From: Phyllobates terribilis
Lineage: Eukaryota
Assembly: GCF_046119375.1 (NCBI RefSeq)
Contig: NW_027363092.1
Location: forward strand, 186,001-250,000
Direction of reading: 5' to 3'
Length of the DNA stretch: 64,000 nucleotides
Shown here: positions 9,217 to 55,100 of the stretch, one piece after another
Position numbering within the stretch: position 1 is the stretch's first letter
How the letters are laid out: each line of letters opens with the position of its first letter
Position numbers and translations under genes: made by a program
The notes under the pieces: generated by a model
Databases searched by the model: none
What the model was told of the DNA's origin: nothing
The model's input: only the letters and a program-made list of their open reading frames with translations

Positions 9217-10366
9217 TCTCTCTGAATGCTACCGCGTTTCAGAGAAAATATATTTGGGAAGGACGTGGTTACCTCAGTGCAGCCTCGGCCTGCTTCTCCC
9301 CATCCCAATCCAGTTAATTGACACATGTGAGTCTTGTCAGTCAACTAGAAAAAGGGCACAGAGAAGCAGGTCTGGGGCCGGGCTGGGCCGCCAGACTGCC
9401 GGGCCGGTCTAGGCCTGTTGGGTATGTCCCTGTTGTGCCCGGCTGACTCTTCGTGTGGGTGTGAAACATCCCAACTTATGGAGGAATACATTTTCGGATG
9501 CTCTTGCAAAGCCACGTTCTGCTTCATAATGCCTGTGGTTTGAGTAGCTTAACGGGTTCCCTTTTAAAGGGGTTTCCTATTATATTAAAAATGGGTAAAT
9601 TCATCCAAGTTGTAAAAATAAACAATTGAATATAGTTAATTTTTAAATAATTGACCCCCTTTTACTATTGTATACGACATGAATGTTTTGTTAGGCTGCA
9701 TGCCCACTATGCGTTTTTGCTGCAGAATTTCTGCATTGAAAACGCTTAAACGCTTGGTAATAAGTCCCCCCTATGGTTCCCAATGATAATCCGCATGTGC
9801 TGTGCACATGTTCTGGAAATTTAGTGGATTATCATCGCAGAAAAATTCCCAGTATGTCCGTTATTTTTGCGGACACGCAGCGTAATTGCCGCCATTGACT
9901 TGCATTGAATTGCTTAATATCCGCATAACTACATGTGCACATGCGGATATTAAGCGATTCAATGTGAGGATGGTACCCAGGTCTGGCGAAGAGGAGACTC
10001 TCCTCAGACCCGGGTACCATAGGACCTGTAAAAAAATAGAATTAGACTTACCTGTAATTCGGTTTCTAATAACCACCACGACGGCACCAAAGGAGGATGT
10101 CACCCCACCCTAATAGGGACCGGAAACACAAAAGAGGTTAAATAGCTCCTCTCTCATCCTCCTTCCAGTGTTTTTATAAAGGACCGCACAAGTATGGATG
10201 CTTCAAATTATATTTATTCAAATTAAATGATTGGCTAACCAAGCCTGGGAGGGAATTACCAGTGCTGTCGTGGCGGTTATTAGAAACCGAATTACCGGTA
10301 AGTCTAATTCTATTTTCTTCAATAACCCCACGACAGCACCAAAGGAGGAGTACCAAAGACTCATGT

Positions 10367-12270
10367 TCAGGGTGGGACAATGGCCTGAAGCACTTTCCGC
10401 TCAAAGGCCAAGTCTTTAATGGACATTAAGTTTAGTTTGTAATGCTTGGTGAAGGTATGGACCGAAGACCATGTAGCTGCTCTGCATATCTGCTCGAGGG
10501 AAGCGCTAGCCTTTTCTGCCCAGGAGACGGACATGGCTCTTGTAGAGTGTGCTTTCAGTTTCTCTGGTGGTGAGAGATTTTGGATCTGATATGATTCCAC
10601 AATTGCTTTCTTGATCCAAGTAGCGATGGTAACCTTTGAGACCCTTTTCCCTCTGTTCTGACCAAATGGCTGAACAAAGAGGTTCTGATCTTTTCTCCAG
10701 GCGTCTGTCCTCTGGAGGTAGTGAAGAACAACCCGTCTTGCATCCAAAGTATGGTATTCTTCTTCTCTTTTATTATTTGGGTCTTGACAGAAAGAAGGCA
10801 GAATTATGTCCTGAGACCTATGAAAGTCTGAGATTACCTTTGGTAAGAAAGATGGGTCCAATTGTAGAATAATCCTAACATCCAGGATTCTCAGATAAGG
10901 GTCATTCACTGAGAAGGCTTGGATTTCTCCTACTCTTCTAGCAGTGGTAATTGCTATTAGAAGGGTATGTGCACACGATGCAGAAATGAAGCAGAAAATT
11001 TCTGCAGCATTTCTGCATCTCCCTGGCAGAAAAAACACATGCAGATTGTGCATGCGTTTTTCCTGCAGAATACATGCGGATTCACATGCGTTTCCGCATG
11101 CAGATTGACAAGCGCTTTCCAGGCGATTTTAGCATCACCTGGAAAGTGCTTGACAACTAGGTCACACTATATAAATCCATGCAAACAGCATGGATTTATA
11201 TAGTGTGACCCGAGAGAGTGTATATACTTACCTCCGATGGCCCCCGGTGTCCCGCTCACTCCGTTCTGCCGGCAACTTTGAACTGAAAGACCTGCCGACG
11301 TCAGCGTCACGTGACCCGTCACATGACTCTGACGTCAGCACAGGTCCTACAACTCACTGCAAGTGCCGGGAAGCAAGCACGAGCGCTGCGCGGGCCGACA
11401 GATGGTAAGTATATATATATATTTTTTATTTTATTCTTGTTTTACAGCTTTTTTAATGGTACCTGGGTGTGGAGGAGACTCTCCTCTCCTCCACACCCGG
11501 GTACCATCCGCACATTAGAACGCACCAATTACGCAAGTACAGATGCAGTCTTGCGGAATTGGTGCGTTCTAATGCAAGTCAATGGCGGCGAAAACGCCGC
11601 GTTTACGCAAGATTAAATGACATGCTGCGGATTTTTGAGCGCAGCGTTTACGCTGCGGAAAAATCCGCATCATGGGCACGGCACATGCGGATTTCCATTG
11701 GGGAACATTGCTTCCCTTCTACCATGCGTTTTTCATGCGTTTCCGCGGCGTTTACGCAACTGCAAAAACGCCGTGGAAACGCATGAAATACGCATCGTGT
11801 GAACTCAGCCAAAATGTTGTTTTCCAAGCTAATTTATCCAGCTCTATTGAGGCCAAAGGTTCAAATGGTGGTAGTGTCAGACTTTTAAGGACAATATTAA
11901 GATCCCAGGAGGGAACGTGGTTAATTATTCTGGGACGCAGACGAGTAGCTGCTGTCATGAACCTTTTTACCCATCGGTGTTCGGCAAGGCTCTGGTCGAA
12001 GTAGATACTCAGTGCCGCAATCTGAACTTCTCCAGCCCTTCTTGTAGAAAATCCAAGATCTGGGTCATGTCAGGATGCCGAAGATCTGGTATATTTGGTT
12101 TATACCATGCTAGGAAGGTCTTTCATATCTTGCTGTATATGGAGTTTGTGATTTGTTTCCTACTTTTTTGTAGGGTATGAATTACTCGGTCTGAGAGCCC
12201 TCTAGCCTTCAGGAATGTGAATTCAGAAGCCAGGCTGCTAGATGGAGGTTCTCTGGATCTGGATGGAGTA
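10367..12270 (-). pseudogene. DIRS-A tyrosine recombinase, interrupted by MITE
   Basis: TTARR...FLPKV...AHSTRAMS...ATW...HY motifs; removing the MITE restores WKTTF-LIAITTARR. Confidence 0.9.
10963..11810 (-). mobile_element. Harbinger-like MITE inserted in DIRS-A YR
   Basis: gggtatgtgcacacg ... cgtgtgaactcagcc termini, imperfect 3-bp TSD (gaa/aaa), same internal hairpins as 46929-47719 in reverse orientation. Confidence 0.85.
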
Positions 12271-14072
12271 TTGGACCCTGATAGAGAAGGTTTCTGATTG
12301 CTGGTAGAATGAGGGGTCCCTCTATGCTTAAATTGTTTAGTGCACTGAACCAACTTATTTTGGGCCAAAGCGGGGCTATCAAGATTATCTTTACCTCCTC
12401 GGTCCTTACTTTCTGAAAGGTTCTGGGTAGCAATGGAATTAGGGGAAAGGCGTAAGCCAGATGGAAACGCCATGGGTGAGCGAATGCATCTATCCCCAGG
12501 CATGCGTCGTCTGAATCTAGGGAGAAGTATTTTTTTGCCTTGGTGTTCTGGCGTCTTGCAAAGAGGTCCACCTCCGGACGACCCCATCGTTTGGTCAGCA
12601 TGTGGAAAATGTCTCAGTCCAGCTCCCATTCTCCCGGATGCATATTCCTTCTGCTCAGAAAGTCGGCCTGGGTGTTGTCTGAGCCTTTTTATGTGCAACC
12701 CTGATAAGGAACGAAGATGTCCTTCTGCCCAGAAGAATATTCTTGCCGAGATACTCTTTAGATTCTAGTACCTTGTGCTCCCTTGATGAGATAGATGAGC
12801 TACGGTAGTCATGTTGTCTGAGTAGACTTTTACGTGTTTGCCCGTAATGATTGGAGCCCATATTTCGAGCGCTTCCTCCACTGCCTTTAATTTGCGGAAG
12901 TTGGAGGATTTCTTGCTGGTTTCTTTTGTCCAGACCCCTGAAGGGGGTTTGAGCAACAACGGCTCCCCATCCTGTTTTGCTGGCATCTACCGTGACTGTT
13001 ACCAGAGGGAACTGAGACCATGGAACCCCTATTCATAGGATCCTTGGGTAGAGCCACCATGATAGGGATGTCTTCACATAATGAGGGATCATGATCTTCC
13101 TGTCTAGTGAGTTTGGGGATCCGTCCCACTGTGCAAGAATATGAGTCTGCAAAACTCTGGTGTGAGCCTGAGCCCAGGCTACAGATTGAATGCAGGCTGT
13201 CATGGAGCCGAGGGTTGACATGACAGACCTTAGGGACACTCTGTTCAGGGTCTTTAGATTCGATATCTTGGATCTCAAGAGTATCTGTTTGTCCTTTGGT
13301 AGGAAGGAGGTCTGGCGGAATCTAGTAGAACCCCCAGGAACGTTTTTTCTGTGGCAGGGACCAGGTCTGACTTTTGATGATGATTTATCAACCACCCTAG
13401 GGTGGTCAGGATCTGGATTGTTCTTTGCAGATCTGCCTGGAGTGATTCTACTGAGGGACTTACTAGTAAGAAGTCGTCGAGGTAGGGAATGATGTAGATT
13501 TTCTCTTTCCTGATTGAAGCCACTACTTCTGACATAATTTTGGTGAATATTCTTGGTGCTGAAGATATCCAGAACGGCAATACGTTGAATTGGAAGTGTA
13601 ATGTCTGATCCTCTTGAACCACTGTAAACCTTAGAAATTTTAGATATGTTGGATGTATAGGGACGTGATAGTATGCGTCCTGTAAGTCTATGGTTGCCAT
13701 CACATACCCCTGCCCTATTAAGGGAACTGCTGATTTGATGGACTCCATCTTGAATCTTCGGTAGACAATGTACTGGTTTAAGGGTTTCAGATATATTATT
13801 ATTCTGTATGTGCCGTTTGGTTTCTTTATCATAAACAGGCGTGAATAGTGACCTGTGTATCTTTCTGTTTTTCGAACTGGTGAAATAGCCCCCAAGGATA
13901 GTAGGTCTTTTAGGCCGGACATCAGAGCGATTTTTAATCTTGTAGAGTTTAGATGAGTTATCCTTACTCTTCTGGGAGGATATGAGGAGAATTCGATCTT
14001 TACCCCTTCTTGAATTACATTTAAGACCCACCGATTGGAGCAGATCTTTTGCCATTGGGGAAGGTATTTCAT
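12209..14072 (-). pseudogene. pol: DIRS-A RT / RNase H / methyltransferase-like ORF (frameshifted)
   Basis: IDLQDAYYHVPI, LPFWISSAPRIF, YLDDFLL (RT); SDNMTTVAHLSHQG (RH); VDLFA...AYAFP...APLWP (MT-like). Confidence 0.95.
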
Positions 14073-15460
14073 GATTCGTCACCGCTTCTGTTGTCGTTGT
14101 CCTTTTGGGGAAAAAATATTCCTATCTTTACCCCCTTTGGGGTAGCTCCATCAACCGGACTTGCTCTTCCCGTTGTATTGGGGATTCTGTTCCTGAGGGT
14201 GGCGAAAGGGGGTCTTCTTATAGTGTCTAGGTTCAGGCAAGGATTTCTTTTTGTCAGCCTCCTTTTCCAGGAGGTCGTCAAGGGCCTGGCCAAACATATA
14301 TTCTCCCTTGAAGGGAATAGAACAAAGTTTTATTTTAGAGGCCACATCACCGCTACACGATTTCAGCCATAGTGCTCACCTTGTGGCGTTTGATAGGACT
14401 GCTGCCCTGGCGGTTACCCTCACGGATTCTGCTGAAGCGTCTGCCAGGAAGTCAGTGGCTTTCTGCAGTAAAGGTAGGGAAGCTTGTATCTCCTCTCTGG
14501 ATGTGCCCATAGCCAGGTGTTCTTCAAGCTGGTTGAGCCATCTTGACATGGACCGTGCAACACATGTGAAGACTACATTTGTGTTCATAAGGACTGCTGA
14601 TGTTTCCCAGGATTTCTTGAGAAGGCTGTCCATCTTACGGTCCAGAGGATCTTTTAGTTGAGAGGAATCTTCGAATGGCAATACTGTTTTTTTAGCTACT
14701 CTTGCCACTTGAATGTCGACCTTGGGTATCTTTGTCCAACATTTTGTGGTTTCTTCATCTACGGGAAACCTATTTTTCATTTCCGCTGGTGTATTCAGCC
14801 GTCTTTCAGGGTTTTCCCATTCGTCCAGGATTAGATCCTGAATGTTTTTATGTATCGGGAACACCATCCTTTTCTTTGAACGGAGACCACCGAACATCTC
14901 TTCCTGGACTGATCTAGTGGGCTTCTCTTCTTCCACTTCCATCTTTCTTCTTACTGCTGAGAGGAGGTCTTCCATAAATTCCATTGAAAAATAATATTTC
15001 TTATTTTCCGGACCTTCCTCTGCTGAACTAAGTTCACCTTCCTTTGTAGGGTCTTCTGGAAGGAATGTCTCGTCCTGGGAGTCCGAGTCTCCTTTTTCTT
15101 CCAGGGAAATTTTCCTCTTTTTTGCCTTTGGAGGCGAATCAGAAGTGGATCGGGAAAAGGAGGCCAATGAAGACTGAATCTCCTGCTGGACTATCCCTTT
15201 GATTTCGTCCATAAGGGACGGCTGCTCTTCCCTCATAATCTTTTCTGTGCATTTCTGGCATAAATATTTTTTGCTGGAAGAAGACAGTTTTTTTGAACAT
15301 ATAGCACACTTCCGGCTAGATTTATTTCCTGGTGCAGGATCCTTGTCCCCCTAAAAAAGAGGGAGAAGGGTAATTAAATATTAATTCTAACCTGCACCTA
15401 GGAAAGGACCCCCAGTGCCAGACTTACTGGGACTGGAATCGTGCTGGGCTCCGCAGACAT
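14069..15460 (-). pseudogene. gag: DIRS-A gag, spliced model: exon 15460-15428, intron 15427-15351, exon from 15350; one late frameshift near 14376
   Basis: MSAEPSTIPVP|gtaagt...ttttttag|GDKDPAPGNKSSRKCAIC-x12-CQKC joins in frame with the 14376..15236 ORF. Confidence 0.8.
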
Positions 15461-15539
15461 GGCAAAGATAGACTTCTGACATCCAATGTAGCAAACAAAT
15501 GGATTAGGTCCTACCTTAGCTGTCTTTAGTCCAGGGCTG

Positions 15540-15546
15540 TTATATA
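15540..15546 (-). promoter_or_regulatory. Putative internal TATA box upstream of DIRS-A gag exon 1
   Basis: TATATAA ~80 nt before the ATG; equivalent boxes in C (29658), H (52667), E (45228). Confidence 0.5.
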
Positions 15547-16721
15547 GGCGACTGGACTCAGCGCTCCTTCCCTTCCCTGGGGAGGGGAGTGGTGTAGCTC
15601 CTCCCCCTGGGTCCAATTTGGTGAAGCAGGAACACCTGCGGGGTTATTCATTTATTTCCCCCTTTCTCTTTTTTTGAACAGATCGGAAGTGACGTCAGGG
15701 ACCCATTTCCGGTGTCACACGCAACTTTCCGGCCGCTTTGTTTTTTTGCTTTCCAGGGTGGAACGCATACCGGAAGTGACGTTCCCGGCGGTCCGTGTCA
15801 CTTCCAGGATTCCACACGTGGCGCTCCGTTACGGAGACCGCTGGAGGCCGCTTAGAGGGGGGAGAGGAGCGGGGCTGGAGAGCTCGAGGAGGCCTCCAGC
15901 CCGACACCCACCGGACCTTACCCGCAGGCGCGGACACGGTGGGGACAGGAGTCCCGAGTCCCAGAGGAGACGGGAGCAGCATCAGGGAAGGAGGAGAAAA
16001 CTGCCCGGTCCCAGCTGCCCGGCTTTAACAGGTATGTCAGGTGTCTGCCGCCGGCACAGAGCACCCTGGATGACCTCTTCATCCCAATAGGGACAGGAAA
16101 AAACACTGGAGGGAGGATGAGGGAGGAGCTATTTAACCTCTTTGTGTTTCCTGTCCCTATTAGGGTGGGGTGACATCCTCCTTTGGTGCTGTCGTGGGGT
16201 TATTGGAGAAAAAGAATTTAAAATAAAAAATAAACATTATACTCACTCGCCTTCCGATGTCCCCCGGTCTCTTCTACGGCTTGCGGTGGTCTAAAAGGAC
16301 CTTCCATGACGTCATTTAGTCATGTGACATCGGCGGTCGCGTGACCTGCCACATGACTAAATGACGTCATGAAAGGTCCTTTTAGACCATCACGAGCCGT
16401 ACAGGAGACCGGGGGCCATCGGAAGGTGAGTATAATGTTTATTTTTTACCATTTTTATTCTTTTTTTAACTATTAACTTCATGCCGGTTGCATGGATTTA
16501 TATAGTGTGACCAAGTTGTCAAGCACTTTTCCAAGTGATACTAAAATCGCTTGCAAAGCGCTTGTCAACCCGCATGCGGAAATGCATGCAAAAACGCTTG
16601 ACAAACGCTTCTACCTGACAGGAAAAACGCATGTACAATCCGCATGCATTTTTCCTGCCAGGGAGATGTGGAAAAAATCTGCAGCATTTCTGCATCGTGG
16701 GCACATAGCCTAACATCTCAT

Positions 16722-27696: not shown

Positions 27697-28997
27697 TACC
27701 TGGCGCTGCCGGGTGGGGAGAGGGGAGTGAAGAAATTACCAGAGAAGCGCTGCGGAGGCTCCCTTGCAGACCTGGTGTCCGGGTTCTCCAGGGGAGGCAG
27801 GCGGCGCTGCTCAAGATGCCAGCCGCTGGAGCGGTGGAATCACGTGTGCGGAGGTTGACACAAAGGCATCTCTGGGCTGGCGTGGCGGTAAAAGAATATG
27901 CAAGGATTGCATAGAGAGAACCTTGTTGGAAGTGTCCCCCGCATTGATGGATAATATGCGATCCATGATTAGAAGTGAAATTAAAAAATCTGTTAGCCAG
28001 GGAAGCTAACGGGAACTCTAGTTCAGAAGACGAAAGGGAGGAAGGCCAGCTAGGAAGTTTTGATACAGGTTCCACATCGTCATCATCCTCTTCAGATCGT
28101 GACGAGGACCCCTCATGTTTTCTCAGGCGGAAAACTAGTAGGCTAGTGAAAGCGGTTAGAGCTACTATAAACGTGGAAGAGGTGAAGGAGCCCAGGACCA
28201 TACAGGATCAAATGTTTGGGGGTCTAGAAAGCAAGAAACATAAGTGTTTTCCAGTTCACAAAACCATTACCCAGCTAATCAAAAGGAAATGGGGGGGGGA
28301 GGGGGCACAGAAAGGCTTACATCCTTAAACTGATTAAGAAAAGATACCCTTTCGGAGCAGAGGACTCAGAAGTTTGGGACAAGGCACCCAAAATGGATGT
28401 GGCGGTATGCAAAGTCTCCAGAAACTCCTCCTTCCCATTTAATGATGCAGGACTCCTGAAGGACCCTCTTGATGGGAAAGTAGAGTGTGTTCTGAAAAGA
28501 GCTTGGGAAACAGGGGCTCCAACATTCAAGCCGAACATAGCAGCAACATGCACATCTAGATCCTTAAGTGTATGGCTGGCTCAATTACAAGACCAAATCT
28601 GGAATAAATGCCCTAGGGATGAGCTGCTGATGTTTTATGGCCAGTATAGATTTCAAAGACTCCTATTACCATGTTCCCATCTTTCTAGGTCATCAAAGAT
28701 TCCTAAGAGTGGCAGTCGACATCAAGGGGCATTTAATGCATCTGCAATTCCAAGTCCTCCCCTTTTGGATTATCCATGGCCCCAAGGGTCTTTACAATAA
28801 TAGTGGCTGAAATGTCAGCACACGTTAGGGAAGCAGACGTGATTTTCATCCCGTACCTGGACGACTTTATCGTAGTAGGAAAATCTGAGTCCGAATGCAA
28901 TCTGGCAGTATCACAGGTCTCAAGAATCTTAGCCTCCTTGGAGTGGCTAATAAACTTAAAAAAAAGTCCCGACTAGAGCCAAGAGAAAAACGAATCC

Positions 28998-31900
28998 TTC
29001 TCAATACGCCTTCCACGACAGCATTGGAGGATGTTGTCCACGCCCTATTGGGGGACAGGAACACAGATTAAAAGCCCCTCCCCACCGTCCGTCCCCAGTG
29101 TTTTCCTGTCCCCCTTGGGGCATGGAGAGATCCTGCAGTGCTGTCGGGCCGGCAGGGCAGTGCTGTTTTTTCCTACCTGTGTGCCGGGCAGTGGTCGGTC
29201 GGGGTGCTCCCTCCTCCCTCCTTGCTGCCCCCCCCTTTGGGGGGGGACCACCCTGGCTTCCTGCGCCCCACTGAGGGTAAAGCTAGCCGGGGGATCATTC
29301 ATGCTGGAGGCCGCTCCCGCCCTCCGGCATCTCCCCTTTCCTGGAGTGCGGTTGCCGCGCGCACTGGCGTCCCCGCGCGCGTGCTGGATGTGACTTTGCC
29401 GCGCGCGCACACACCGGAAGTGGTGTCGCCGCGGCCCTGCCGCTCCGGCCGGAGCATTCCACGCTATCCCAGGCTCCTGAACCGGCGGGCGGTTGGGCGC
29501 GCGTGTGCGGGTGACGTCATGGCCTCCATCGCTCCGGTCGGCCGTTCCATGAGGGACGCTGAATGAAGGACCAAAGGCCCATACCGAACCTGGATTGGCC
29601 CTTTAAAGTGACTGGAAAGGGGAGGGGACTGAGGTCCCTTGCTGGGAGGCACGGTTTTATTTAAAAACCCGCCTGAAGACGCCAAAGGTAAGGCTATTCC
29701 CACCATATTCCCACTATGGAAGGTGATAGGTCCTGTACCCCTGCATCTGCAGAGCCCAGCATGCCCACGGCTACAGTGAGTAGTACCTGGGTGGTCACGA
29801 TGAGGTTATCTCTGCCTCCTTTGAGATGACACTAGATCTCCCCTCCTTCTATTTCACACGGGTCCCCTTCTCTCCCCTTTCTTAGGAGGACAAGGCCCCC
29901 GCTTCTAAGAAGGATAAAGACCAGCCACGTAGATGTGGCATCTGTACAAAAAAGCTGTCCTCATCCTGCAAGAAGAAGTTGTCAGCCCTTGTACGGATAA
30001 AATAATTAGAGAAGAAAACCCCTCACTGATCGAGGAGCTTAGATCACTCGTTAAACAGGAAGTCCAGGTGGTTAGACAGGAGGTCCAGGCCTCCTTTGCT
30101 GCCCTGCCTGTCTATTCCTCCTCCAGGCCCTCTCCCCCTAAGAAGAGGAAGATCCAAGAGTTAGACTCTGATGTGGTCTCTATGGACGCTAGTAGCTCAG
30201 CCTCTGATGATTTTGAGGAATTGGCGTCCGTGGGGCCTGCCAAACCAATCGAAACCGGTAGATATTATTTTTCCTCGGACAACTTAGAGGAATTACTGGA
30301 CGCTGTTAGAGGCACTATGGGGCTGGAAGAAGTGGAGGTTCCCTGTTCTGTTCAGGATGAGATGTTTAGGGGTCTTAAAACCAAAAAACAGACTGGGTTT
30401 CCAGTCCATGAGGTAATTGGGGATCTCATCCGACAGGAATGGGAGTCCCCGGAAAATTGCTTTTCCACCCCTTCTGAATTAAAACATAGGTTTCCATTAG
30501 AGGGTGATGGTTTTGAACGGGAAGTCCCAAAGTAGACATCCAGGTGGCTAGGGTACTGAGAAAAACCTCACTTCCCTTTGAGGACTCGTCCCAATTAAAG
30601 GATCCTTTGGCCCGCAAATGGAAAGCGTCCTTAAAAAATCATGGGAAACCTCCTCTGCCTCTCTTAAAGTCAACATTTCCTTGACTTGTGTGGCCAGATC
30701 CCTCTTCAAATGGCTGACCCAACTGGAGGAACACCTGTCTCAGGGCACGTCCAGGGCAGATCTACTTGACTCCATTCCTCTCCTTCAAAAAGCCACAGGT
30801 TTCTTAGCGGACGCCTTGGCTGAGTCAGTCCGTATCGCGGCTAGGGCAGCTGTCCTGTCCAATACCGTTCGCCGTGCACTATGGCTCAAAACATGGAGTG
30901 GGGACGTCACCTCTAAAGTCAAGCTCTGTTCCATTCCATTCCAGGGAAAATATATATTTGGCCCAGCCCTGGATGAAATCCTGGAAAAGGCCTCGGACAG
31001 GAAGAAAACACTTCCTGAACAGAAACAGCCTAAGAAACGTTCCTTTCGGCCTCCCCAAAGTCAACCCTCACAGTACAGAGGAAAGGGAAAATCTGGGCGC
31101 TGGAGCTATCCCAAAGGCGGCAAGGGTCGCAACATCCTTGTACCCCAGCAACAACACCAGCAACAGGACAAACAATGACTTGGTCCGTGTAGGAGGGCGG
31201 CTTTCGAATTTCTTTCCCCAGCGGCAGGCAATATCTTCCTGCCAGTGGATTCTCAATACCATCGAGGAGGGTCTTTTATTTGAATTCGAGAGTCGCCCAC
31301 CTCTGATCCTGAGGGTCACGTCCCTTCCCTCTCGGGGGGGGCTCAGGATCTCCTATCAGTCGCCCTAAAAAACCTTCTGGATTCGGGAGTGGTGTCTCTA
31401 GTTCCCCCTGGTCAGGAGGGGACGGGTCACTACTCAAAAATATTCCTAATACGGAAGCCATCAGGGACCCCACGCATCATAATCAATTTGAAGTCCCTAA
31501 ACCATCACATCAAATATCGACGTTTCAAGATGGAGTCTATAAAGTCCACTATTCCCCTAATAGGGAAAGACTTTGTCATGGGTCGACTTAGTCCAGGGTT
31601 CTCACATCAAGATTCTCTTGGACAACATGACCACAGTTGCCTTCCTTCATCAAGGAGGTACGAATGTACACAACCTAAAACAGATTGCAGTCCGAATATT
31701 TTTTTGGGCAGAAAGTCATCTCCTATCACTTTAAGCAATCCACCTGAAAGGCTCAAACAACGTCCAAGCAGACTTTCTAAGCAGGGAAGATATCCAGCCA
31801 GGAGAATGGAGCCTGAATCCTCAGATCTTCCAGTCGCTGTAGCCAAATGGGGTCTCCCCGAGGTAGATCTCTTTGCCAGTCAGTCAAACACAAAACTTTC

Positions 31901-44440: not shown

Positions 44441-45738
44441 TTAAATGCTGCTGTCGGAAATTGACAGCGTCATTTAACATCAGATCAGCCGTGTCGGGAA
44501 AGATGCGGGCTCAGCTCCGGAGCCCACATCAAAGGTGGAGACATGACATGTGCCTTTTGTTTTAGGACATTCATATAAAGCACCTGTGAAGTGGTAATAC
44601 TGCCCCACTTGGTATACAGCAGGAGCCATCACACAGCATTATATAAATATTCATTCATTATAGGTAAATTTTATCGATCACCCATGACAGCACCACAAGA
44701 GTGGATCCGCCCACCAAGGACAGGAAAAACCTACAGGTTTAAAAGGGCAGGCACTTCTCCCTTGCATCAGTTTGTTTTCTGTCCATGACAGGGGAACCTT
44801 GTGAGGCCTACCTGTATCCGTGGAGTAAAGATGAAGACAACATTTTTTTTTTCCCCAGGCCTGGCCGCCTGGTTCAGGCAGGTATCCCTTCTCTGCCTCA
44901 GCCAGCGCAGGGTCTTTGGAGGCACCACAGTGGGTCCAAGGGGTCTTTCACACGTGAGCGGCATCTCCAGGCAAGTGATGGACTGTGTTTCCTCCTCACA
45001 GTGCTGTATTACTAGCATGGCTGAAACTGGAAATAGATCGGCTCCTGGAAGTTAACGGGCGCTTACCAGTGATGCGCCCGTAGAGCGTGAGCGCACCAGG
45101 AGGAGATGCCGGGAGACCTGTTCCCAAGATGTGGGGTGTTTGAATGATGGCGCCAAAAGGCGGATGTGACGCAGGAGCCACGTGACCCGGAAATGCCGGG
45201 GGTACCGGTAGACAGCACAGAGGGCAGTATAAAATAGAAGCTGGCACCACTGCTCAGGTGCTTCCCAGCTCGCCTGTCCCCTTCAGGAGGATGGCGACCG
45301 ATGCGGAGCAGCAGCAGCCACAGTAGCTGGATGGGAAGCCCCAGGTGCAGATGCGACGTCCCCGTGCCAGACCACAGAGAGACGGAGATCTACAACAAAA
45401 AGCAGATCCAGGCAGCAAAGCTCCAGCAAGGTGGAAGAATCTGCAGCCTCCAGTGATGACATACTGTCTTAGACATGTCCTTCCTTTAGACCGGTACCAT
45501 TCGATTGCATCAGGGTGGTAAGTGATCTTCATGAAAGAATCCCCTTCTCTTTTGTCATTTATTGTCAGGGAAAGAAGTGTATGGCTTAAGCCAGGCACAA
45601 TGAGTGTGCACTTTGTAAGACCTTATTGCCTGACTCCCATCAGAGGAGGCTTTGTCAATTTTACATAGAGCAGACAGTGGCACATGAGAACCTTAATTTC
45701 GCCACTGACTTATGATCCCTCATGAAGGCAGACATTAA

Positions 45739-46858
45739 CCCCTTTCTGACATGGAGCGTAATAGTACACCTTATGTCAGATCCCCCTCCTTGGTGCTCGC
45801 TCCAGCGCTGAGCCCGCACCTTTCCGGGCACATGTTAGATGTATAGATCAGCTGACATGTGCCCGCAACTGACGTGGGTAGAATCGCGATCCACCCGCGG
45901 CTGTTAACCAGTTAAATGCCACTGTCAATCTCTAACGGCATTTAACTCGCGCTTCTGGGAGGTGCGTCATAGGCCCCACCCATCGGCGACCCCGTCACAT
46001 GATCGCAGGTCGCCGATGGGTTGGCATGACAACCCTAGGTCTGCAGGACCCCCCTCTGGTTGTCACTGCCAGATTGGTATGAGCGCCACCCAGCGGTCGG
46101 CGCTGTTAGCAAGTGAGCAAATCTGCTACACACAGGGATCTGATGATCGCCTGTGTGTAGTACAGTAGATCAGACAAGTGCTGCTTCTAGTCTCCCATGA
46201 AGACTATTGAAGCAAGCAAAAAGTAAAAAAAAAAAAGTTTTTAAAAGTATATAGAAGTTTAAATCTCCCCCCTCTCCCCATTCAAAATAAAACAGTAAAA
46301 AAAAACACATACACATTTGGTATTGCCACATTCAGAATCGTACAATCTATCAATAAGAAAAAAGATTTAATCCGATCGGTAAACGGAGTAATGAGAATAA
46401 AAATTCTAAACTCCAGAATTTACGTTTTTTTGTCGCCGTAACATTTCAATAAAATGCAATAACGGGCAATCAAAACATCCTATCTACCCCAAAATGGTAT
46501 CAATAAAAATGTCCACTCGGCACGTTTAAAAAAAAAAAAAAAAAGCCCTCATCCGGCCCCAGCTCACGAAAAATGGAGATGCTATGGGTCAGGTCAGTTT
46601 TAGCATTCAGTGAACGTGGTTAAAATAAAAAAAATCAATTGTGGAATTGTACTTTTTTTGCAATTTCACCACACTTGGAATTTTTTCCTGTATTCCAGTA
46701 CACGATGTGGTAAAACCAGTGATGTCGTTCAAAAGTACAACTTGCCCTGCAAAAAATAAGCCCTCACGTGGTCATACTGACCGAAAAATAAAAAAAAGTT
46801 ATGGCTCTGGGAAGAGGGGAGGCAAAAAAACCCAGAAAATGCTCTGGTCATAAAGGGG
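45739..46858. mobile_element. piggyBac-like MITE, 1120 bp, in E gag
   Basis: TTAA|cccctt ... aagggg|TTAA. Confidence 0.88.
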
Positions 46859-50700: not shown

Positions 50701-51020
50701 TACCTCTCCTTGGTGAATGGTGCACATCTGATTTGCAGGGTTTTGCAAAGAAAAAAAAGCAGATGGATATACCTTTTCACGCATTTAGTCAAGTATAAGC
50801 TGTGATATGGCACCATTACAATGTCATGAATTTGAAAAACCGTATGTGTGTCTATCTAAACTAATAAACAGAGTTCATCTAATGCTATGTAAACCACTGT
50901 GGCGTGATATAGGACTACTCCTTTTTAAAGTTGTAGGGTTTCCTGTCCTTGAGGCGGATCCTTTCTATGGTGCTGTCGTGGGTTCTGGAAAATCCGTTTA
51001 CCGATAAGTAATCCTCATTT
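47797..51020 (+). mobile_element. DIRS copy I: 5' UTR + YR remnant + ICR + ITR (gag/RT lost)
   Basis: Start ttttcccatttcccacgacagcacc matches the ICR junction (50600-50672); YR fragments 49640-50580; TTT junctions. Confidence 0.88.
48170..49636. mobile_element. Right part of a piggyBac-like element within DIRS-I
   Basis: Similar to 3800-4700; ends aaaagggg|TTAA; left end missing. Confidence 0.7.
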
Positions 51021-52121
51021 TCCACTAGAAGTGGATAGACTGGTAAAAGCAGTCAGATCCATGATGGACATTATGGACACTAGGCCTGAAAAATCTGTGC
51101 AGGATATAATGTACCGGGGGCCTAGGTCAAAGAAAATTGAAATCCTTTCCGTTAAATAAAAGGACCTGGGCTTTAGTACAGAGTGGAAGAAACCAGAAGA
51201 GAGGCTCTCTTCCTCCATCCTTCAAAAGAAAATATCTATTTGAGCCTTCCTTATCATTTTTGGATAAAGCCTCTAAACTGGACATGGCAAGAACTAAGAA
51301 AGCGGATTCTTTTCTTAAGGGTACATGGGAGACATCCGCAGGAGCCCTGAAACCGGCAGTTGCAGCAACATGTACTGCCAGGTCCTTGATGATCTGACTG
51401 GATTGGTTGGCATACCAGTAAAAGGACAGAGTGGCAAGGGATAACATCTTGGCTACTATTTTGCTTATACGGGGGGCAGCTGCTTTCCTATGTGATGCTT
51501 CTGCAGACTCTGTAAGGTTGCTGGCTAGATCGTCGCCCTTTTTAATGCTGCCTGAAGGGCTTTGTGGCTAAAGTGCTGGCCTGGGGACTTTCAGGCCAGA
51601 TCGAGACTGTTCCATCCCGTGTGAGGGAGAATAACTCTATGACCTAGCCCTGGACGAAATCCTGGGGAAAATGGGGGATGCCAAAAAGGGATTCCCTAGT
51701 CTGTCTATTCCTATTTACAGACGATCCTTCCGAAAGAAGAAGTTTGTCCGAAGGAGACCTCCCAGGGAACAAGGAAAATGGGATGATTGCAGAAGGAAAG
51801 GTGGAGGCCTCATGTTCTGAACCTCTTTGCAGGAGACCAGGAAATCTGGTCAATGACTCCCGGCCCAGACAGGGGGAAGGCTTTCGTCCTTCCCTGCCTG
51901 GGAGGGTATTTTGGCCAGTTGGTAGTTCCTCAACCTGTTTTGATCCAGATTGAGATTGGAACTCCAGTTGGACCCACAAGGAAGATTTGTTTTGACTACT
52001 TCCCTCTCATTCAAATAAGCAACCCTTACTGTAGTCCTGAAGGAAATCTGAAGGCTCTGAACAAACTCCCAAAGGTTCAGTCCTTTTAAGGTGGAATCCA
52101 TTAAATCAGCAATAAAGTTGC

Positions 52122-55100
52122 TTTCCAGGATGTCCCTCCTGACAGCACCTCAGGAGGATGTCTTTCATATCTGGTAGGGACAGGAAACAGAGTTTAAAAG
52201 GGGCCACCCTCCACCCATACCTTCAGTGTTTTTCCAATCCCTATCGGAGACAGGACGCAGGAGCTCCTGTTGCTGGATGCAGGAGGATCTGGATGGGGTC
52301 CTTGCACTCCTCCCCTTCCTTCTGACGCTGTCCGGAGGCCAACACCCTGCCAGACAAGGGGTCCCTCAGCCTGGCCGGTCGAGCGGTGGCTCCCGAAGTG
52401 GACTGTTTTCCCCCGCAAAGAGGGGGCTCTGTGTCCATGTTGCTGCAGCCCTGCGCCCGGTCCTGATGCGCGCACGGAAGAAGACTATGCGGCACTTCCG
52501 GTTACAGAGGCAGTGGAACGCATGCCTCTAGTAACCTGCGTGCGTTCCACGCTGAAACGCACTTCCGGTTCCTGTTTTTGTTTGAAAAAATGGGCTCCTA
52601 TCCGAAAATTAAAGGAGAAACTCCTGAATTGACGAGTCAGAGGGAAGACAGGTGAGACCAAAAAGCTATTTAAACCCCAGTATGCTCTGGGGCTGGATCT
52701 GAGGTATCACAGTGTCTTGGTCACCAGCCATGGAAGGATTAACCACTGGTCTCCCTGATAAGCCAGCAGAAACCCTGATACAAGTAAGCCTGGACCTAGA
52801 CAAAAAAGACCCTGATGGGAGATGGAATCTAGTTCTGAGGAGGATGAGGAACGGTCAGTTTACTCCGACCCTAAACAGGATGAAGGAGAAGGCTCTATTT
52901 CAGTTCCCCCAGAAGAAAGGAATAAAATTTTATTTTTTCATGGGAGAACACTGAACCACTTTTATCAGCGATCAGGTTGACTATGAAAGTTGAAGACCAC
53001 CTCCAGCCCTCCTCGATACAAGATGAAATGTTCGGAGGGTTGAGAACCCGAATGAACAGTATTCCCGGACAAAAATCATATTAAAGCAATGATCTTTGAG
53101 GAATAGGAGGAAGTAGTGAAGAGCGTAGTCATTCCTAGAAGTTTCAGATCCAGTTTGCCTTAAGAATCAGAAGAAATTAAGCTGTGGGAAGAAATTCCAA
53201 AGATTGACTTTCCAATAGCTAGGGTAGCAAAGAAAAATGTTGATTCCTTTTGAAGACTCGTCATGCTTAAAAGACCCTATGGACAGGAAGGCAGACAACT
53301 CAAAAAGACCTTTGAAACCGCAGCTTGTGTAATCAAAAGAAACATTGCAGCAACTTCGGTAGCAAGATCCATGATAATTTGGTTGGAACAATTGGAAGGC
53401 CATCTGAGAAACAAAACCTCCAGAGGAGATCCGAGACTCGATCCCTCTACTAAGAATGGCAACAGAATTTATGTCTGACTCCTCAGCTGCATCAATAAGG
53501 TTTGCCGCAAAAAATGACGCTTTAGCTAGTACAGCCAGACGAGCAATATGGCTAAAAACCTGGTCTGGAGATAACCACTCCAAAAACAAGTTGTGCTCCA
53601 TACCTTTTTCTGGCCTTCGAGTGTTCGGCCCGGTTCTAGGTGATATGCTAGAAAAGTCCTCGGACGAAAAAGGTTTTCCGGAAGAAAAACCCAGGAAAAC
53701 ATCCTTTCGGAGACCACGTCCCCAACAGAGACCAGAATACTCTGGGAATGGAAAATCGGGTAGATGGAACTACCTGAAAGGAAGTAAAAGCAGGAGTTCC
53801 TTTCCTAGTTTGGGAAATGGCTTGTCTAGCCAATGACGCTATTAGAGTAGGAAGGAGACTCAAACACTTTCTAGGGGCTTGGTCGGGGTATCCAGCAGTC
53901 CATGGATACTCCGGTTAATTGCAGATGGGTACAAGTTAGAGATGGTAAAGGTTCCTCAGGAGAGATTCCATCTAACAACTGCACAGTCCCCATTAGTCCA
54001 ACAAAGATTGCTGACGTCAAGAAACTGTTACTAGCAGGGGTAGTAATACCGGTGCCAGTGGCCGAACAGTTTTCGGGAAACTACTCAAGCCTGTTCTTGA
54101 TTGTTTTTTAAAAAAAATCGGGAGGTAACTAACGTACAATTATAAACCTAAACTCGTTAAACAGGTCAGTGGCGTACAAAAAATTCAAAATGGAATCCCT
54201 CAGATCCACCATTCCCCTGGTCAGAGAGAACATGGTGATGTGCATGTTGGACCTCAAGGAGGCATATTATCATGTACTCATTCACCCCCACAGCCAGAAA
54301 TATCTAAGATTCGCATTGGAAGTCGGGCACAATGTCCAGCATTCATTATCAGCTCCGATGCCTCCTGTTTGGTCTCTCCTCAGCTCCACGCATTTTCACC
54401 AAACTAGTAGCTGAGGTTATGGCTTTCCTAAGAGAACAAGGAGTTCTGATAGTCCAGTACCTGGACGATTCCCTTCTAATGGCAGATTCTCCCTAGCATT
54501 TAAGAGCCAGTTTATCATCAACCTTAGTTCTAAAGAATCTAGGTTGGATTACAAACTGGAAAAAAATCAGATTTTTTTTTTACCGGGAATAGAAGATTTT
54601 TCTAGGGATTCTTCTGGACTCGGAAAGACAGATGTCCCTCCTTGCGGAAGAAAAACGAACGGATCTCAGAGACAAGATCATCACCTTTGGGAAGAAATCA
54701 AAGGTGGCAATCAGAGAATGCATGAAGATCTTGGGTCTGACAGCCTCCACATCTGCGGTTCGGTGAAGCCAATTTCATTCAAGGCCTCTTCAGCACCAAA
54801 TCCTAACATCCTGGAACAGAAAGATGGATGGTCTGTACAAGAAGATAATCTTGTCAGGAACAACAAAGGAATCTCTGAAGTGGTGGATTTCAAGAACCAA
54901 CTTAGAGAGGGGAGTTATGTGGAAGTTGACACGATTCATCACCCTTACCACCGACGCAAGCAGCAAAGGCTGGGGAGCACAGGTGAAAGATCGGTACCTA
55001 CAAGGCACCTGGGGGGCACAATACCTTCTTGCATCATCGAGCCTAAGAGAACTCCAACAGTCTGGAAAACATTGAAAGCATGTCACATGGATCTGAAACA

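What the first reader, a model, noticed from the sequence alone, without database searches (positions are those of the whole stretch)
15351..15460. DIRS1 gag appears to carry a conserved phase-0 spliceosomal intron
Seen in sequence: in A, ATG(15460)-MSAEPSTIPVP is followed by CCA|GTAAGT, a 77-nt intron with a pyrimidine tract ending ttttttAG, then GDKDPAP...CAIC-x12-CQKC in frame with the main gag ORF. Unspliced, the zinc-finger segment has an in-frame TAG immediately upstream and no Met. The divergent copy C has the same layout (SAEPSMPTAT|GTGAGT, 110 nt, cttAG|EDK...CGIC; 29776-29885). H has MEGLTTGLPDKPAETLIQ|GTAAGC (52784, phase 0; acceptor deleted). E has GTG|GTAAGT (45518) and ttgtcAG|GKK...CALC (45568). 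Established: reverse transcription of spliced RNA normally purges introns, so retention implies an unspliced genomic RNA alongside a spliced mRNA. I do not know whether this has been described for vertebrate DIRS1, so novelty needs a literature check.
Basis: partly seen in the sequence, partly recalled or inferred. Interest (0 to 1): 0.85.

Follow-up and report, generated by a model that had tools for sequence, protein, structure and literature searches.

The report
Retained splice-type intron in frog DIRS gag
A group of frog DIRS1-type retrotransposons keeps a tiny intron just after the start codon of its gag gene, which is unusual for elements that copy themselves through RNA; it is well supported by comparison but has not yet been seen as spliced RNA.

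Summary
In copy A (minus strand), ATG 15460 plus 10 codons is followed by GTAAGT, a 77-nt stretch ending TTTTTTAG (15427-15351), then the gag ORF in phase 0. An in-frame TAG lies directly upstream of that ORF, and there is no Met before the invariant CxxC-x12-CxxC knuckle. Copy C has the same layout with an unrelated 110-nt stretch.

I found the same design in eight further lineages with DNA in hand (Dendropsophus, Engystomops, three Logan-contig families). Bufo bufo and B. gargarizans show it by gene-length arithmetic. All ten lineages with DNA are phase 0, 75-110 nt, and 6-31 codons upstream of the knuckle. RefSeq already models these genes as two exons.

The layout arises in 0.1-0.3% of shuffles per locus. 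Flanking DNA is unalignable, so the splice signals themselves appear to be conserved.

Two limits apply:
- No spliced RNA was seen. The only read-laying run used short contigs and showed only the unspliced form.
- The intron is not universal. One Xenopus tropicalis family has an uninterrupted gag.

No paper in the searchable library describes it.

Verdict: very likely a real retained intron in one clade of anuran DIRS1 elements, and a new variant of a known kind. First-stage readers flagged the same thing on other pieces of this genome.

The parts
15428..15460 (-). Copy A gag exon 1, coding part: ATG plus 10 codons (MSAEPSTIPVP)
   Evidence: Read directly. It is the only in-frame ATG that can reach the zinc knuckle.
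15351..15427 (-). Copy A intron, 77 nt, phase 0: GTAAGT ... TTAAT branch-like motifs ... CCTCTTTTTTAG
   Evidence: It has stops in all three frames and a length not divisible by 3. The layout is rare in shuffles (14 of 5000).
14376..15350 (-). Copy A gag exon 2: G-D-K-D..., CxxC-x12-CxxC knuckle, LAP2alpha-type domain. It ends at a premature stop at 14376-14378, and gag similarity runs on in the same frame to about 14082.
   Evidence: Pfam PF11560 at 1.2e-7, above its cutoff. tblastn of frog gag proteins runs through the stop.
15540..15546 (-). TATATAA box 86 nt upstream of the gag ATG (inferred mRNA promoter element)
   Evidence: TATA-like boxes lie 48-125 nt upstream of the ATG in six of the ten tabulated loci (copy H, not tabulated, has one too). 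Function not tested.
15676..15830 (-). Cluster of ETS/CRE-like motifs (GGAAGTGAC, GTCACTTCCGG, CCGGAAATG, TGACGTCACTTCCG) upstream of the TATA box
   Evidence: The same TGACGTCACTTCCGG motif is repeated three times upstream of gag in L005. This is inference only.
16099..16212 (-). Left inverted terminal repeat of element A
   Evidence: Inverted repeats I4, I8 and I10.
10030..10175 (-). Right inverted terminal repeat of element A
   Evidence: Inverted repeats I4, I5 and I8.
10262..10349 (-). Internal complementary region: complementary to the outer ends of both terminal repeats, the DIRS1 hallmark
   Evidence: I5 (10030-10087 with 10262-10319) and I10 (10313-10349 with 16176-16212).
13275..14072 (-). 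Reverse transcriptase ORF fragment of element A (pol is broken downstream)
   Evidence: Pfam RVT_1 at 5.1e-19.
10367..11053 (-). Tyrosine recombinase ORF remnant of element A
   Evidence: Pfam Phage_integrase at 0.007, below its cutoff. The translation shows HSTRA and an FTKHY tail.
29716..29775 (+). Copy C gag exon 1 (MEGDRSCTPASAEPSMPTAT)
29776..29885 (+). Copy C intron, 110 nt, phase 0: GTGAGT ... CCCCTTTCTTAG. The last 20 nt before the AG are all pyrimidine.
   Evidence: 11 of 5000 shuffles.
29886..31142 (+). Copy C gag exon 2 (EDKAP...RRCGIC...), frameshifted in several places
52730..52789 (+). Copy H exon 1 (18 codons) and donor GTAAGC at 52784. The rest of the intron, the acceptor and the knuckle are deleted.
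   Evidence: Gag similarity resumes at 52902-52926.
45518..45568 (+). Copy E intron-like remnant, 51 nt (GTAAGT ... TTATTGTCAG), directly before a decayed knuckle region (45569-45790)
   Evidence: tblastn matches start at 45569. Weak evidence.

Best explanation
The stretch 15351-15427 is a genuine spliceosomal intron that has been carried along through retrotransposition in one clade of anuran (hyloid-frog) DIRS1-like elements.

Proposed mechanism:
1. A Pol II transcript carries a short first coding exon. This exon supplies little more than the AUG (1-25 poorly conserved codons).
2. A 75-110 nt phase-0 intron is removed.
3. The AUG is thereby joined to the gag body, which begins G-[D/E]-K and carries an invariant CxxC...CxxC zinc knuckle with no start codon of its own.
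4. Spliced RNA is therefore the Gag mRNA.
5. RNA that stays unspliced is the template for reverse transcription, which is why every copy still holds the intron.

Shown: the layout, its conservation against an otherwise randomised background, and the need for it to reach the knuckle.

Inferred: that splicing happens in vivo, and that genomic RNA and mRNA are separate species. That separation may be helped by a promoter-like block (ETS/CRE-like motifs plus a TATA box) lying just upstream of exon 1 and about 550-650 nt inside the left terminal repeat.
For: The element is DIRS1-like:
- Inverted terminal repeats plus an internal complementary region matching both outer ends.
- gag with a LAP2alpha-type domain.
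- Reverse transcriptase and a tyrosine recombinase remnant.

The same intron occurs in ten lineages with DNA in hand. Intron lengths:
- Window A 77 nt, window C 110 nt.
- Dendropsophus 75, 89 and 81 nt.
- Engystomops 86 and 84 nt.
- Logan families 80, 102 and 78 nt.

Shared features of those ten:
- All are phase 0 and lie 6-31 codons before the knuckle.
- Seven donors are GTRAGY.
- The last 20 nt before the AG are 75-100% pyrimidine in eight.
- Five lengths are not multiples of 3, and seven introns carry in-frame stops.
- Only two (the Logan families L007 and L008) could be read through.

Other support:
- Bufo bufo and B. gargarizans gene ranges exceed the coding length by 77 and 79 nt.
- These are RefSeq XP_ models.
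- The cysteines are invariant across the A1 alignment and at least 90% conserved across A3.
- Leader, exon 1 and intron DNA are at random-alignment identity between families, so only the signals are kept.
- The layout is rare in shuffles, 4-15 of 5000 per locus.
- Related Logan families have a conserved exon-2 start (GDDIPKR, GEENPKR, GEDIPKR), while the read-through 'peptides' before it are unrelated and of different lengths.
- No intron-less copy was found among the models of this clade or in the window.
Against: - No spliced molecule was observed. In one search no contig joins 15428 to 15350, and one contig (X6, record 31) spans the intron unspliced.
- All Logan contigs of eight protein clusters are unspliced.
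- These data are weak. The contigs are short, the runs are only guessed to be RNA, and contigs show presence, not absence.
- RefSeq models can be built ab initio, so they are not independent proof of splicing.
- Three donors are poor (GTACCA, GTAACA, GTATTG).
- One X. tropicalis family has no intron, so the feature is not needed by DIRS1 gag as such.
- Copy A has a weak out-of-frame AUG 22 nt upstream of the gag AUG.
Confidence: 0.8

Rival explanations
1. No splicing takes place. Gag is translated from unspliced RNA by a non-AUG start or from the first internal Met, and the GT...AG layout is a look-alike that gene predictors turn into a short intron to obtain an ATG.
For: - No spliced contig was seen.
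- Two families could be read through in frame (L007 and L008).
- Three donors are weak.
Against: - A look-alike would not keep GTRAGY, the pyrimidine tract, AG and phase 0 at the same place in about ten lineages whose surrounding DNA is randomised.
- A start at the internal Met would leave the invariant zinc knuckle untranslated, which does not fit its strict conservation.
- Most introns have in-frame stops or shift the frame.
Confidence: 0.08
2. The splice signals are real, but their main role is not to make Gag from the element's own AUG. The acceptor serves to capture upstream host exons when the element sits in a host intron (a gene-trap-like way to be expressed), and exon 1 is secondary.
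For: - A Ranitomeya imitator model joins FAM69-kinase exons to gag exactly at the acceptor (P0004...RLR|GDKEPTSG).
- An earlier scan note predicts a BRMS1-Gag fusion (s1-224860).
- Abascal et al. 2015 (PMC4495291) inferred that the DIRS1 gag sequence that became LAP2alpha carried a splice acceptor.
- Many copies lie inside host genes.
Against: - A matching strong donor and an in-frame ATG exon are conserved in the element itself.
- A promoter-like block lies just upstream. Neither would be needed for pure exon capture.
- The fusion models are predictions and were not shown to be expressed.
Confidence: 0.07
3. The intron-bearing copies are host genes (domesticated LAP2-like genes with an ordinary intron), not retrotransposon genes.
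For: RefSeq names them 'lamina-associated polypeptide 2-like'.
Against: - They are multicopy, with identical proteins at several loci.
- They are followed about 40 nt later by a 930-976 aa pol ORF.
- In the window they are flanked by DIRS1-type terminal repeats and an internal complementary region.
- The window copies are decayed.
Confidence: 0.02

Closest known systems
Penelope-like elements (intron retention; Arkhipova et al. 2003; Craig et al. 2021, PMC8557442)
   Same: A retroelement that keeps a short intron through retrotransposition. In Penelope it is a 75-bp intron at the 5' end, associated with an internal promoter. That size and 5' position match what is seen here.
   Different: It belongs to a different order (GIY-YIG endonuclease, target-primed reverse transcription, pseudo-LTRs). 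The Penelope intron sits in the 5' UTR, whereas here it splits the coding sequence in phase 0 and is needed to supply the AUG. Craig et al. call intron retention 'highly unusual among retroelements' and attribute it to the PLE mechanism, which does not apply to DIRS.
Retroviruses, and Drosophila copia or plant Ogre LTR elements, which use splicing (from my own knowledge, not checked here)
   Same: Unspliced RNA serves as the genome or template, while spliced RNA serves as mRNA for a subset of proteins, so splice sites persist in the integrated copy.
   Different: In those elements Gag is made from unspliced RNA (retroviruses), or splicing removes pol to give a gag-only mRNA (copia). Here the Gag reading frame itself needs the splice, so the template RNA would be the one form that cannot make full Gag.
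Canonical DIRS1-like elements as described (Piednoel et al. 2011, PMC3266345; Xenopus survey, PMC9210276; fungi, PMC3783388)
   Same: Same order and architecture: inverted terminal repeats, internal complementary region, gag with a LAP2alpha-type domain, RT/RNase H and tyrosine recombinase.
   Different: Those papers describe three uninterrupted ORFs and never use the words intron or splicing. A Xenopus tropicalis family I checked indeed has an uninterrupted gag.
LAP2alpha (TMPO) and ZNF451 exons derived from DIRS1 gag (Abascal et al. 2015, PMC4495291)
   Same: The same gag domain (Pfam PF11560; hhalign probability 98% to a mammalian thymopoietin over gag positions 156-387). The authors inferred that the colonising sequence carried a splice acceptor.
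   Different: Those are domesticated host exons. The N-terminal part of the mammalian exon is not alignable to the frog gag N-terminus, so identity of the acceptors could not be tested.

Membership tests
DIRS1-like retrotransposon (order DIRS) | Inverted terminal repeats | tested here: met
   10076-10175 pairs with 16099-16197 at 96%.
DIRS1-like retrotransposon (order DIRS) | Internal complementary region matching the outer ends of both terminal repeats | tested here: met
   10262-10319 pairs with 10030-10087 (93%), and 10313-10349 pairs with 16176-16212 (97%).
DIRS1-like retrotransposon (order DIRS) | Reverse transcriptase plus tyrosine recombinase instead of a DDE integrase | tested here: met
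   RVT_1 at 5.1e-19. Phage_integrase scores only 0.007, below its cutoff, but HxxR and a C-terminal HY are visible in the translation. Both ORFs are broken in copy A.
DIRS1-like retrotransposon (order DIRS) | ORF1 (gag) with a LAP2alpha-type domain | tested here: met
   PF11560 at 31.8 bits against a cutoff of 25.
Spliceosomal (U2-type GT-AG) intron | GT...AG ends with a U1-complementary donor, a pyrimidine tract and a branch-point-like motif | tested here: met
   GTAAGT, 95% pyrimidine, TTAAT 24 and 31 nt upstream of the 3' splice site with an AG-free zone. No trained splice-site scorer was available.
Spliceosomal (U2-type GT-AG) intron | Position and phase conserved in homologues while the intron sequence and length drift | tested here: met
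   Ten lineages, all phase 0, 75-110 nt, DNA identity at the random level. Two more are supported by length arithmetic.
Spliceosomal (U2-type GT-AG) intron | Removal from RNA in vivo (junction-spanning reads or cDNA) | tested here: inconclusive
   No joint appeared in the contigs of four runs, and one unspliced contig was seen. All Logan contigs are unspliced. The data are not fit to show absence.
Intron-retaining retroelements (as known for Penelope-like elements) | The intron is present in many dispersed, independently inserted copies | tested here: met
   Two window copies plus remnants; identical intron-bearing copies at three Engystomops loci and eight B. bufo contig records; several first-reader notes elsewhere in this genome.
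Intron-retaining retroelements (as known for Penelope-like elements) | Penelope-type machinery (GIY-YIG endonuclease, pseudo-LTRs) | tested here: not met
   The element has DIRS1 architecture. It therefore works like a PLE in this one respect only and is not a member.

The most novel reading that the evidence does not exclude
The intron is kept because it does something in cis for the element, not merely because unspliced RNA happens to be the template. Three ideas fit this, and they could be true independently:
1. It separates roles. An mRNA from the internal promoter is spliced and makes Gag. A longer RNA from the terminal repeat stays unspliced, cannot make Gag, and is reverse-transcribed.
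2. It marks the transcript as 'host-like', lessening the surveillance that vertebrates apply to intronless mobile elements (HUSH; Seczynska et al. 2021, PMC8770142).
3. Its ready-made acceptor is what let DIRS1 gag be exonised into host genes, including the events that created LAP2alpha and the ZNF451 LAP2alpha isoform in mammals.
Probability: 0.2. Interest if true: 0.8.

Novelty: new variant of a known kind. Interest (0 to 1): 0.6.

Why it matters
Retrotransposons copy themselves through RNA, so introns should be lost. Long-term retention is regarded as a peculiarity of Penelope-like elements (Craig et al. 2021 call it 'highly unusual among retroelements').

A second, unrelated order that keeps a coding-phase intron over deep divergence (gag proteins about 35-50% identical) would have three consequences:
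- Spliced mRNA and template RNA must be kept apart in DIRS elements, whose replication is poorly understood.
- It gives a concrete, testable handle on that separation: the junction coordinates and the two candidate promoters.
- It would explain why genome annotations list hundreds of 'lamina-associated polypeptide 2-like' two-exon genes in frogs.

It may also explain the splice acceptor that Abascal et al. postulated for the birth of LAP2alpha. In addition, it warns that TE libraries which treat ORF1 as uninterrupted will truncate Gag.

Tried and rejected
- **Read laying.** Four runs were held as short Logan contigs. No 15428/15350 joint was listed. The listed joints have non-GT-AG ends and short sides and look like repeat chimeras. 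A loose end at 15352 had only 0.61 agreement and could not be interpreted.
- **Spliced ORFs in Logan clusters.** All members are unspliced or N-terminally truncated.
- **Antisense ORFs upstream of gag in L005, L007 and copy A.** They share no similarity and are spurious.
- **RNA structure around the donor.** Small hairpins can be drawn, but z-scores are -2.7, -0.4, -1.3, -0.3 and +0.1. There is no consistent structure.
- **DNA identity by segment.** The families are too diverged for any segment to stand out. The result only shows that the introns are unalignable.
- **Alignment of frog gag to a mammalian thymopoietin.** Only the C-terminal domain aligns, so homology of the acceptors is untestable this way.
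- **Taxonomic breadth beyond frogs.** Two profile searches and one exhaustive search returned only anuran proteins among those I could name. For Bombina there was no DNA, and the gene range was 2805 nt longer than the coding sequence, which is uninformative.
- **Literature.** Seven searches were run and the DIRS papers, the LAP2alpha paper and a Penelope paper were read; none describes a DIRS gag intron. Goodwin & Poulter 2001 is not held; Poulter & Goodwin 2005 and Poulter & Butler 2015 did not turn up in the searches and were not read.

Full report
**What is there**

On the minus strand of the window, ATG 15460 opens 11 codons (MSAEPSTIPVP). They are followed by GTAAGT and a 77-nt stretch ending CCTCTTTTTTAG (15427-15351). 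The main gag frame then starts at 15350 with GDKDPAPGNKSSRKCAICSKKLSSSSKKYLCQKC.

- In the gag frame the codon just upstream is TAG, and the first Met lies after the zinc knuckle.
- Read through from the ATG, the frame stops after 20 codons.
- The body scores as a LAP2alpha-type domain (PF11560, 1.2e-7, above its cutoff). This is the known signature of DIRS1 ORF1.

The surrounding element has full DIRS1 architecture:
- Inverted terminal repeats at 16099-16212 and 10030-10175.
- An internal complementary region at 10262-10349 that matches both outer ends.
- A reverse transcriptase ORF and a tyrosine recombinase remnant.

Copy A is a dead copy:
- gag has a premature stop at 14376, which frog homologues read through for about 120 more residues.
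- pol is broken, and other repeats are inserted in it.

**Other copies in the window**

- Copy C (plus strand) has ATG 29716, 20 codons, GTGAGT at 29776, and 110 unrelated nucleotides ending CTTAG at 29885, followed by EDKAP...RRCGIC.
- Copy H keeps 18 codons and GTAAGC at 52784 but has lost the rest up to about gag residue 120.
- Copy E has a 51-nt GTAAGT...CAG remnant directly before a decayed knuckle. I count it only weakly.
- Two further gag fragments (27764-28629 and 51016-51781) are 5'-truncated and uninformative.

**Is it more than chance?**

I asked for an ATG, an open frame, GTRAGT, 60-150 nt, a pyrimidine-rich tail and an AG that joins in frame to the fixed ORF. This appears in 4-15 of 5000 dinucleotide-preserving shuffles of the 250 nt upstream, at each of five loci.

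**Relatives**

The exon-2 protein finds only frog proteins, 43-58% identical. Most are RefSeq XP_ models named 'lamina-associated polypeptide 2-like'. They are multicopy and are followed about 40 nt later by a 930-976 aa pol ORF, so they are DIRS copies, not host genes.

Gene ranges exceed coding lengths by one short intron:
- 77 nt in Bufo bufo and 79 nt in B. gargarizans, with no DNA available.
- 75, 89 and 81 nt in three Dendropsophus families, and 86 and 84 nt in two Engystomops families, with DNA.
- 80, 102 and 78 nt in three families known only from Logan contigs.

In all ten lineages with DNA:
- The intron is in phase 0 and lies 6-31 codons before the knuckle.
- Seven donors are GTRAGY, and eight have at least 75% pyrimidine before the AG.
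- Seven have a branch-point-like motif with an AG-free zone.
- Five lengths are not multiples of three, and seven introns carry in-frame stops.
- Exon 1 ranges from 1 to 25 codons, and its peptide is not conserved.

Between families, DNA of the leader, exon 1, intron and even the exons aligns no better than shuffled sequence. The knuckle cysteines are invariant in A1 and at least 90% conserved in A3. In the related Logan families the exon-2 start is conserved (GDDIPKR, GEENPKR, GEDIPKR), whereas the read-through 'peptides' before it differ in sequence and length. So the boundary of constraint lies exactly at the acceptor.

**Limits**

1. *No spliced RNA was seen.* The single read-laying run used four runs held as short assembler contigs, two of them only guessed to be RNA. 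It listed no 15428/15350 joint, and one contig crosses the intron unspliced. All members of eight Logan protein clusters are unspliced.
2. *The intron is not a property of DIRS1 gag in general.* The X. tropicalis model XP_031754978 translates without interruption. In a gag tree, all verified intron-bearing families form one clade with 100/99 support, made up of hyloid-frog and Logan sequences. The intron-less Xenopus family lies far outside it. The state of X. laevis, Rana, Pelodytes, Spea and Bombina families is unknown.

**How it most likely works**

The spliced RNA is the Gag mRNA. Unspliced RNA is the template for reverse transcription, so the intron is inherited. Because exon 1 contributes only an AUG and a variable tail, the protein does not need the intron. 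An intron-less copy would have an intact ORF, yet none was seen. This suggests either that spliced RNA is excluded from reverse transcription or that the intron is useful in cis.

A promoter-like block sits just upstream of exon 1. It consists of several ETS/CRE-like motifs, including TGACGTCACTTCCG, followed by TATATAA 86 nt before the ATG. It recurs in other families, for example as three TGACGTCACTTCCGGTTT repeats in L005. In copy A it lies 550-650 nt inside the left terminal repeat. An mRNA starting there could not be a full-length template, which would give a simple way to keep the two RNA roles apart. All of this paragraph is inference.

**Comparison with what is known**

- Craig et al. 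[quoted passage not shown] They describe a 75-bp 5' intron overlapping an internal promoter in Penelope. The resemblance in size and position is striking, but the element here fails PLE membership and passes DIRS1 membership.
- The DIRS1 overview, the Xenopus DIRS survey and the fungal survey never mention introns or splicing.
- Abascal et al. [quoted passage not shown] A native gag acceptor would fit, and a Ranitomeya model joins host exons to gag exactly there. I could not test whether the acceptors are homologous.
- HUSH targets long intronless transcription units, and introns protect against it (PMC8770142). That paper also reports that short, efficiently spliced stuffers did not protect, so this idea is weak for a 77-nt intron.

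**Verdict**

RefSeq gene models already contain the intron implicitly, but I found no description of it in the TE literature I could search. First-stage readers of this scan flagged the same phenomenon on several other pieces of this genome; none of those notes carried a check.

Noticed in passing
window 15540-15830 (minus strand); L005:330-430; L008:280-340: A promoter-like block lies directly upstream of gag exon 1. It holds several ETS/CRE-like motifs (TGACGTCACTTCCG and relatives) followed by a TATA-like box 48-125 nt before the ATG, and it recurs in diverged families. It lies well inside the left terminal repeat, which suggests an mRNA promoter separate from any promoter for full-length RNA.
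   Followed up: partly
L016:1501-2961 (Xenopus tropicalis, XP_031754978): This DIRS gag is an uninterrupted 486-codon ORF with its own ATG. It is an intron-less family far from the intron-bearing clade in the gag tree.
   Followed up: partly
window 14376-14378 (minus strand): There is a premature stop in copy A gag. Frog homologues have Arg-Arg there and continue for about 120 residues, and similarity in the window continues in the same frame to about 14082.
   Followed up: yes
P0004 (Ranitomeya imitator gene model): FAM69-type kinase exons are predicted to splice into DIRS gag exactly at the gag acceptor (...RLR|GDKEPTSG), giving a host-Gag fusion model.
   Followed up: no
window 16245-16431: A palindrome with 85-nt arms (89% complementary, 17-nt spacer) abuts the 5' end of element A. 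The bin 16161-16250 has word depth 600-2000 in all four runs, so this is a very high-copy repeat.
   Followed up: no
window about 10960-12100, with 16474-16711 and 9773-10005: Sequences inside the pol region of element A form inverted repeats with sequences outside the element, so other repeat families have inserted into pol.
   Followed up: no
L015:1773-1880 (Dendropsophus, XP model P0068): The RefSeq model has a second, 108-nt phase-2 GT-AG intron inside gag after the knuckle. It could be real or a patch over an insertion in that copy.
   Followed up: no
window 15481-15483 (minus strand): An out-of-frame ATG in weak context lies 22 nt upstream of the gag ATG of copy A.
   Followed up: no
L005-L011 (Logan contigs of runs SRR5149381-SRR5149512): Many runs of one series hold 2-5 kb contigs with the leader, unspliced gag and pol of several DIRS families. 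If these are RNA libraries, unspliced full-length RNA is abundant. The organism and library type are unknown to me.
   Followed up: no
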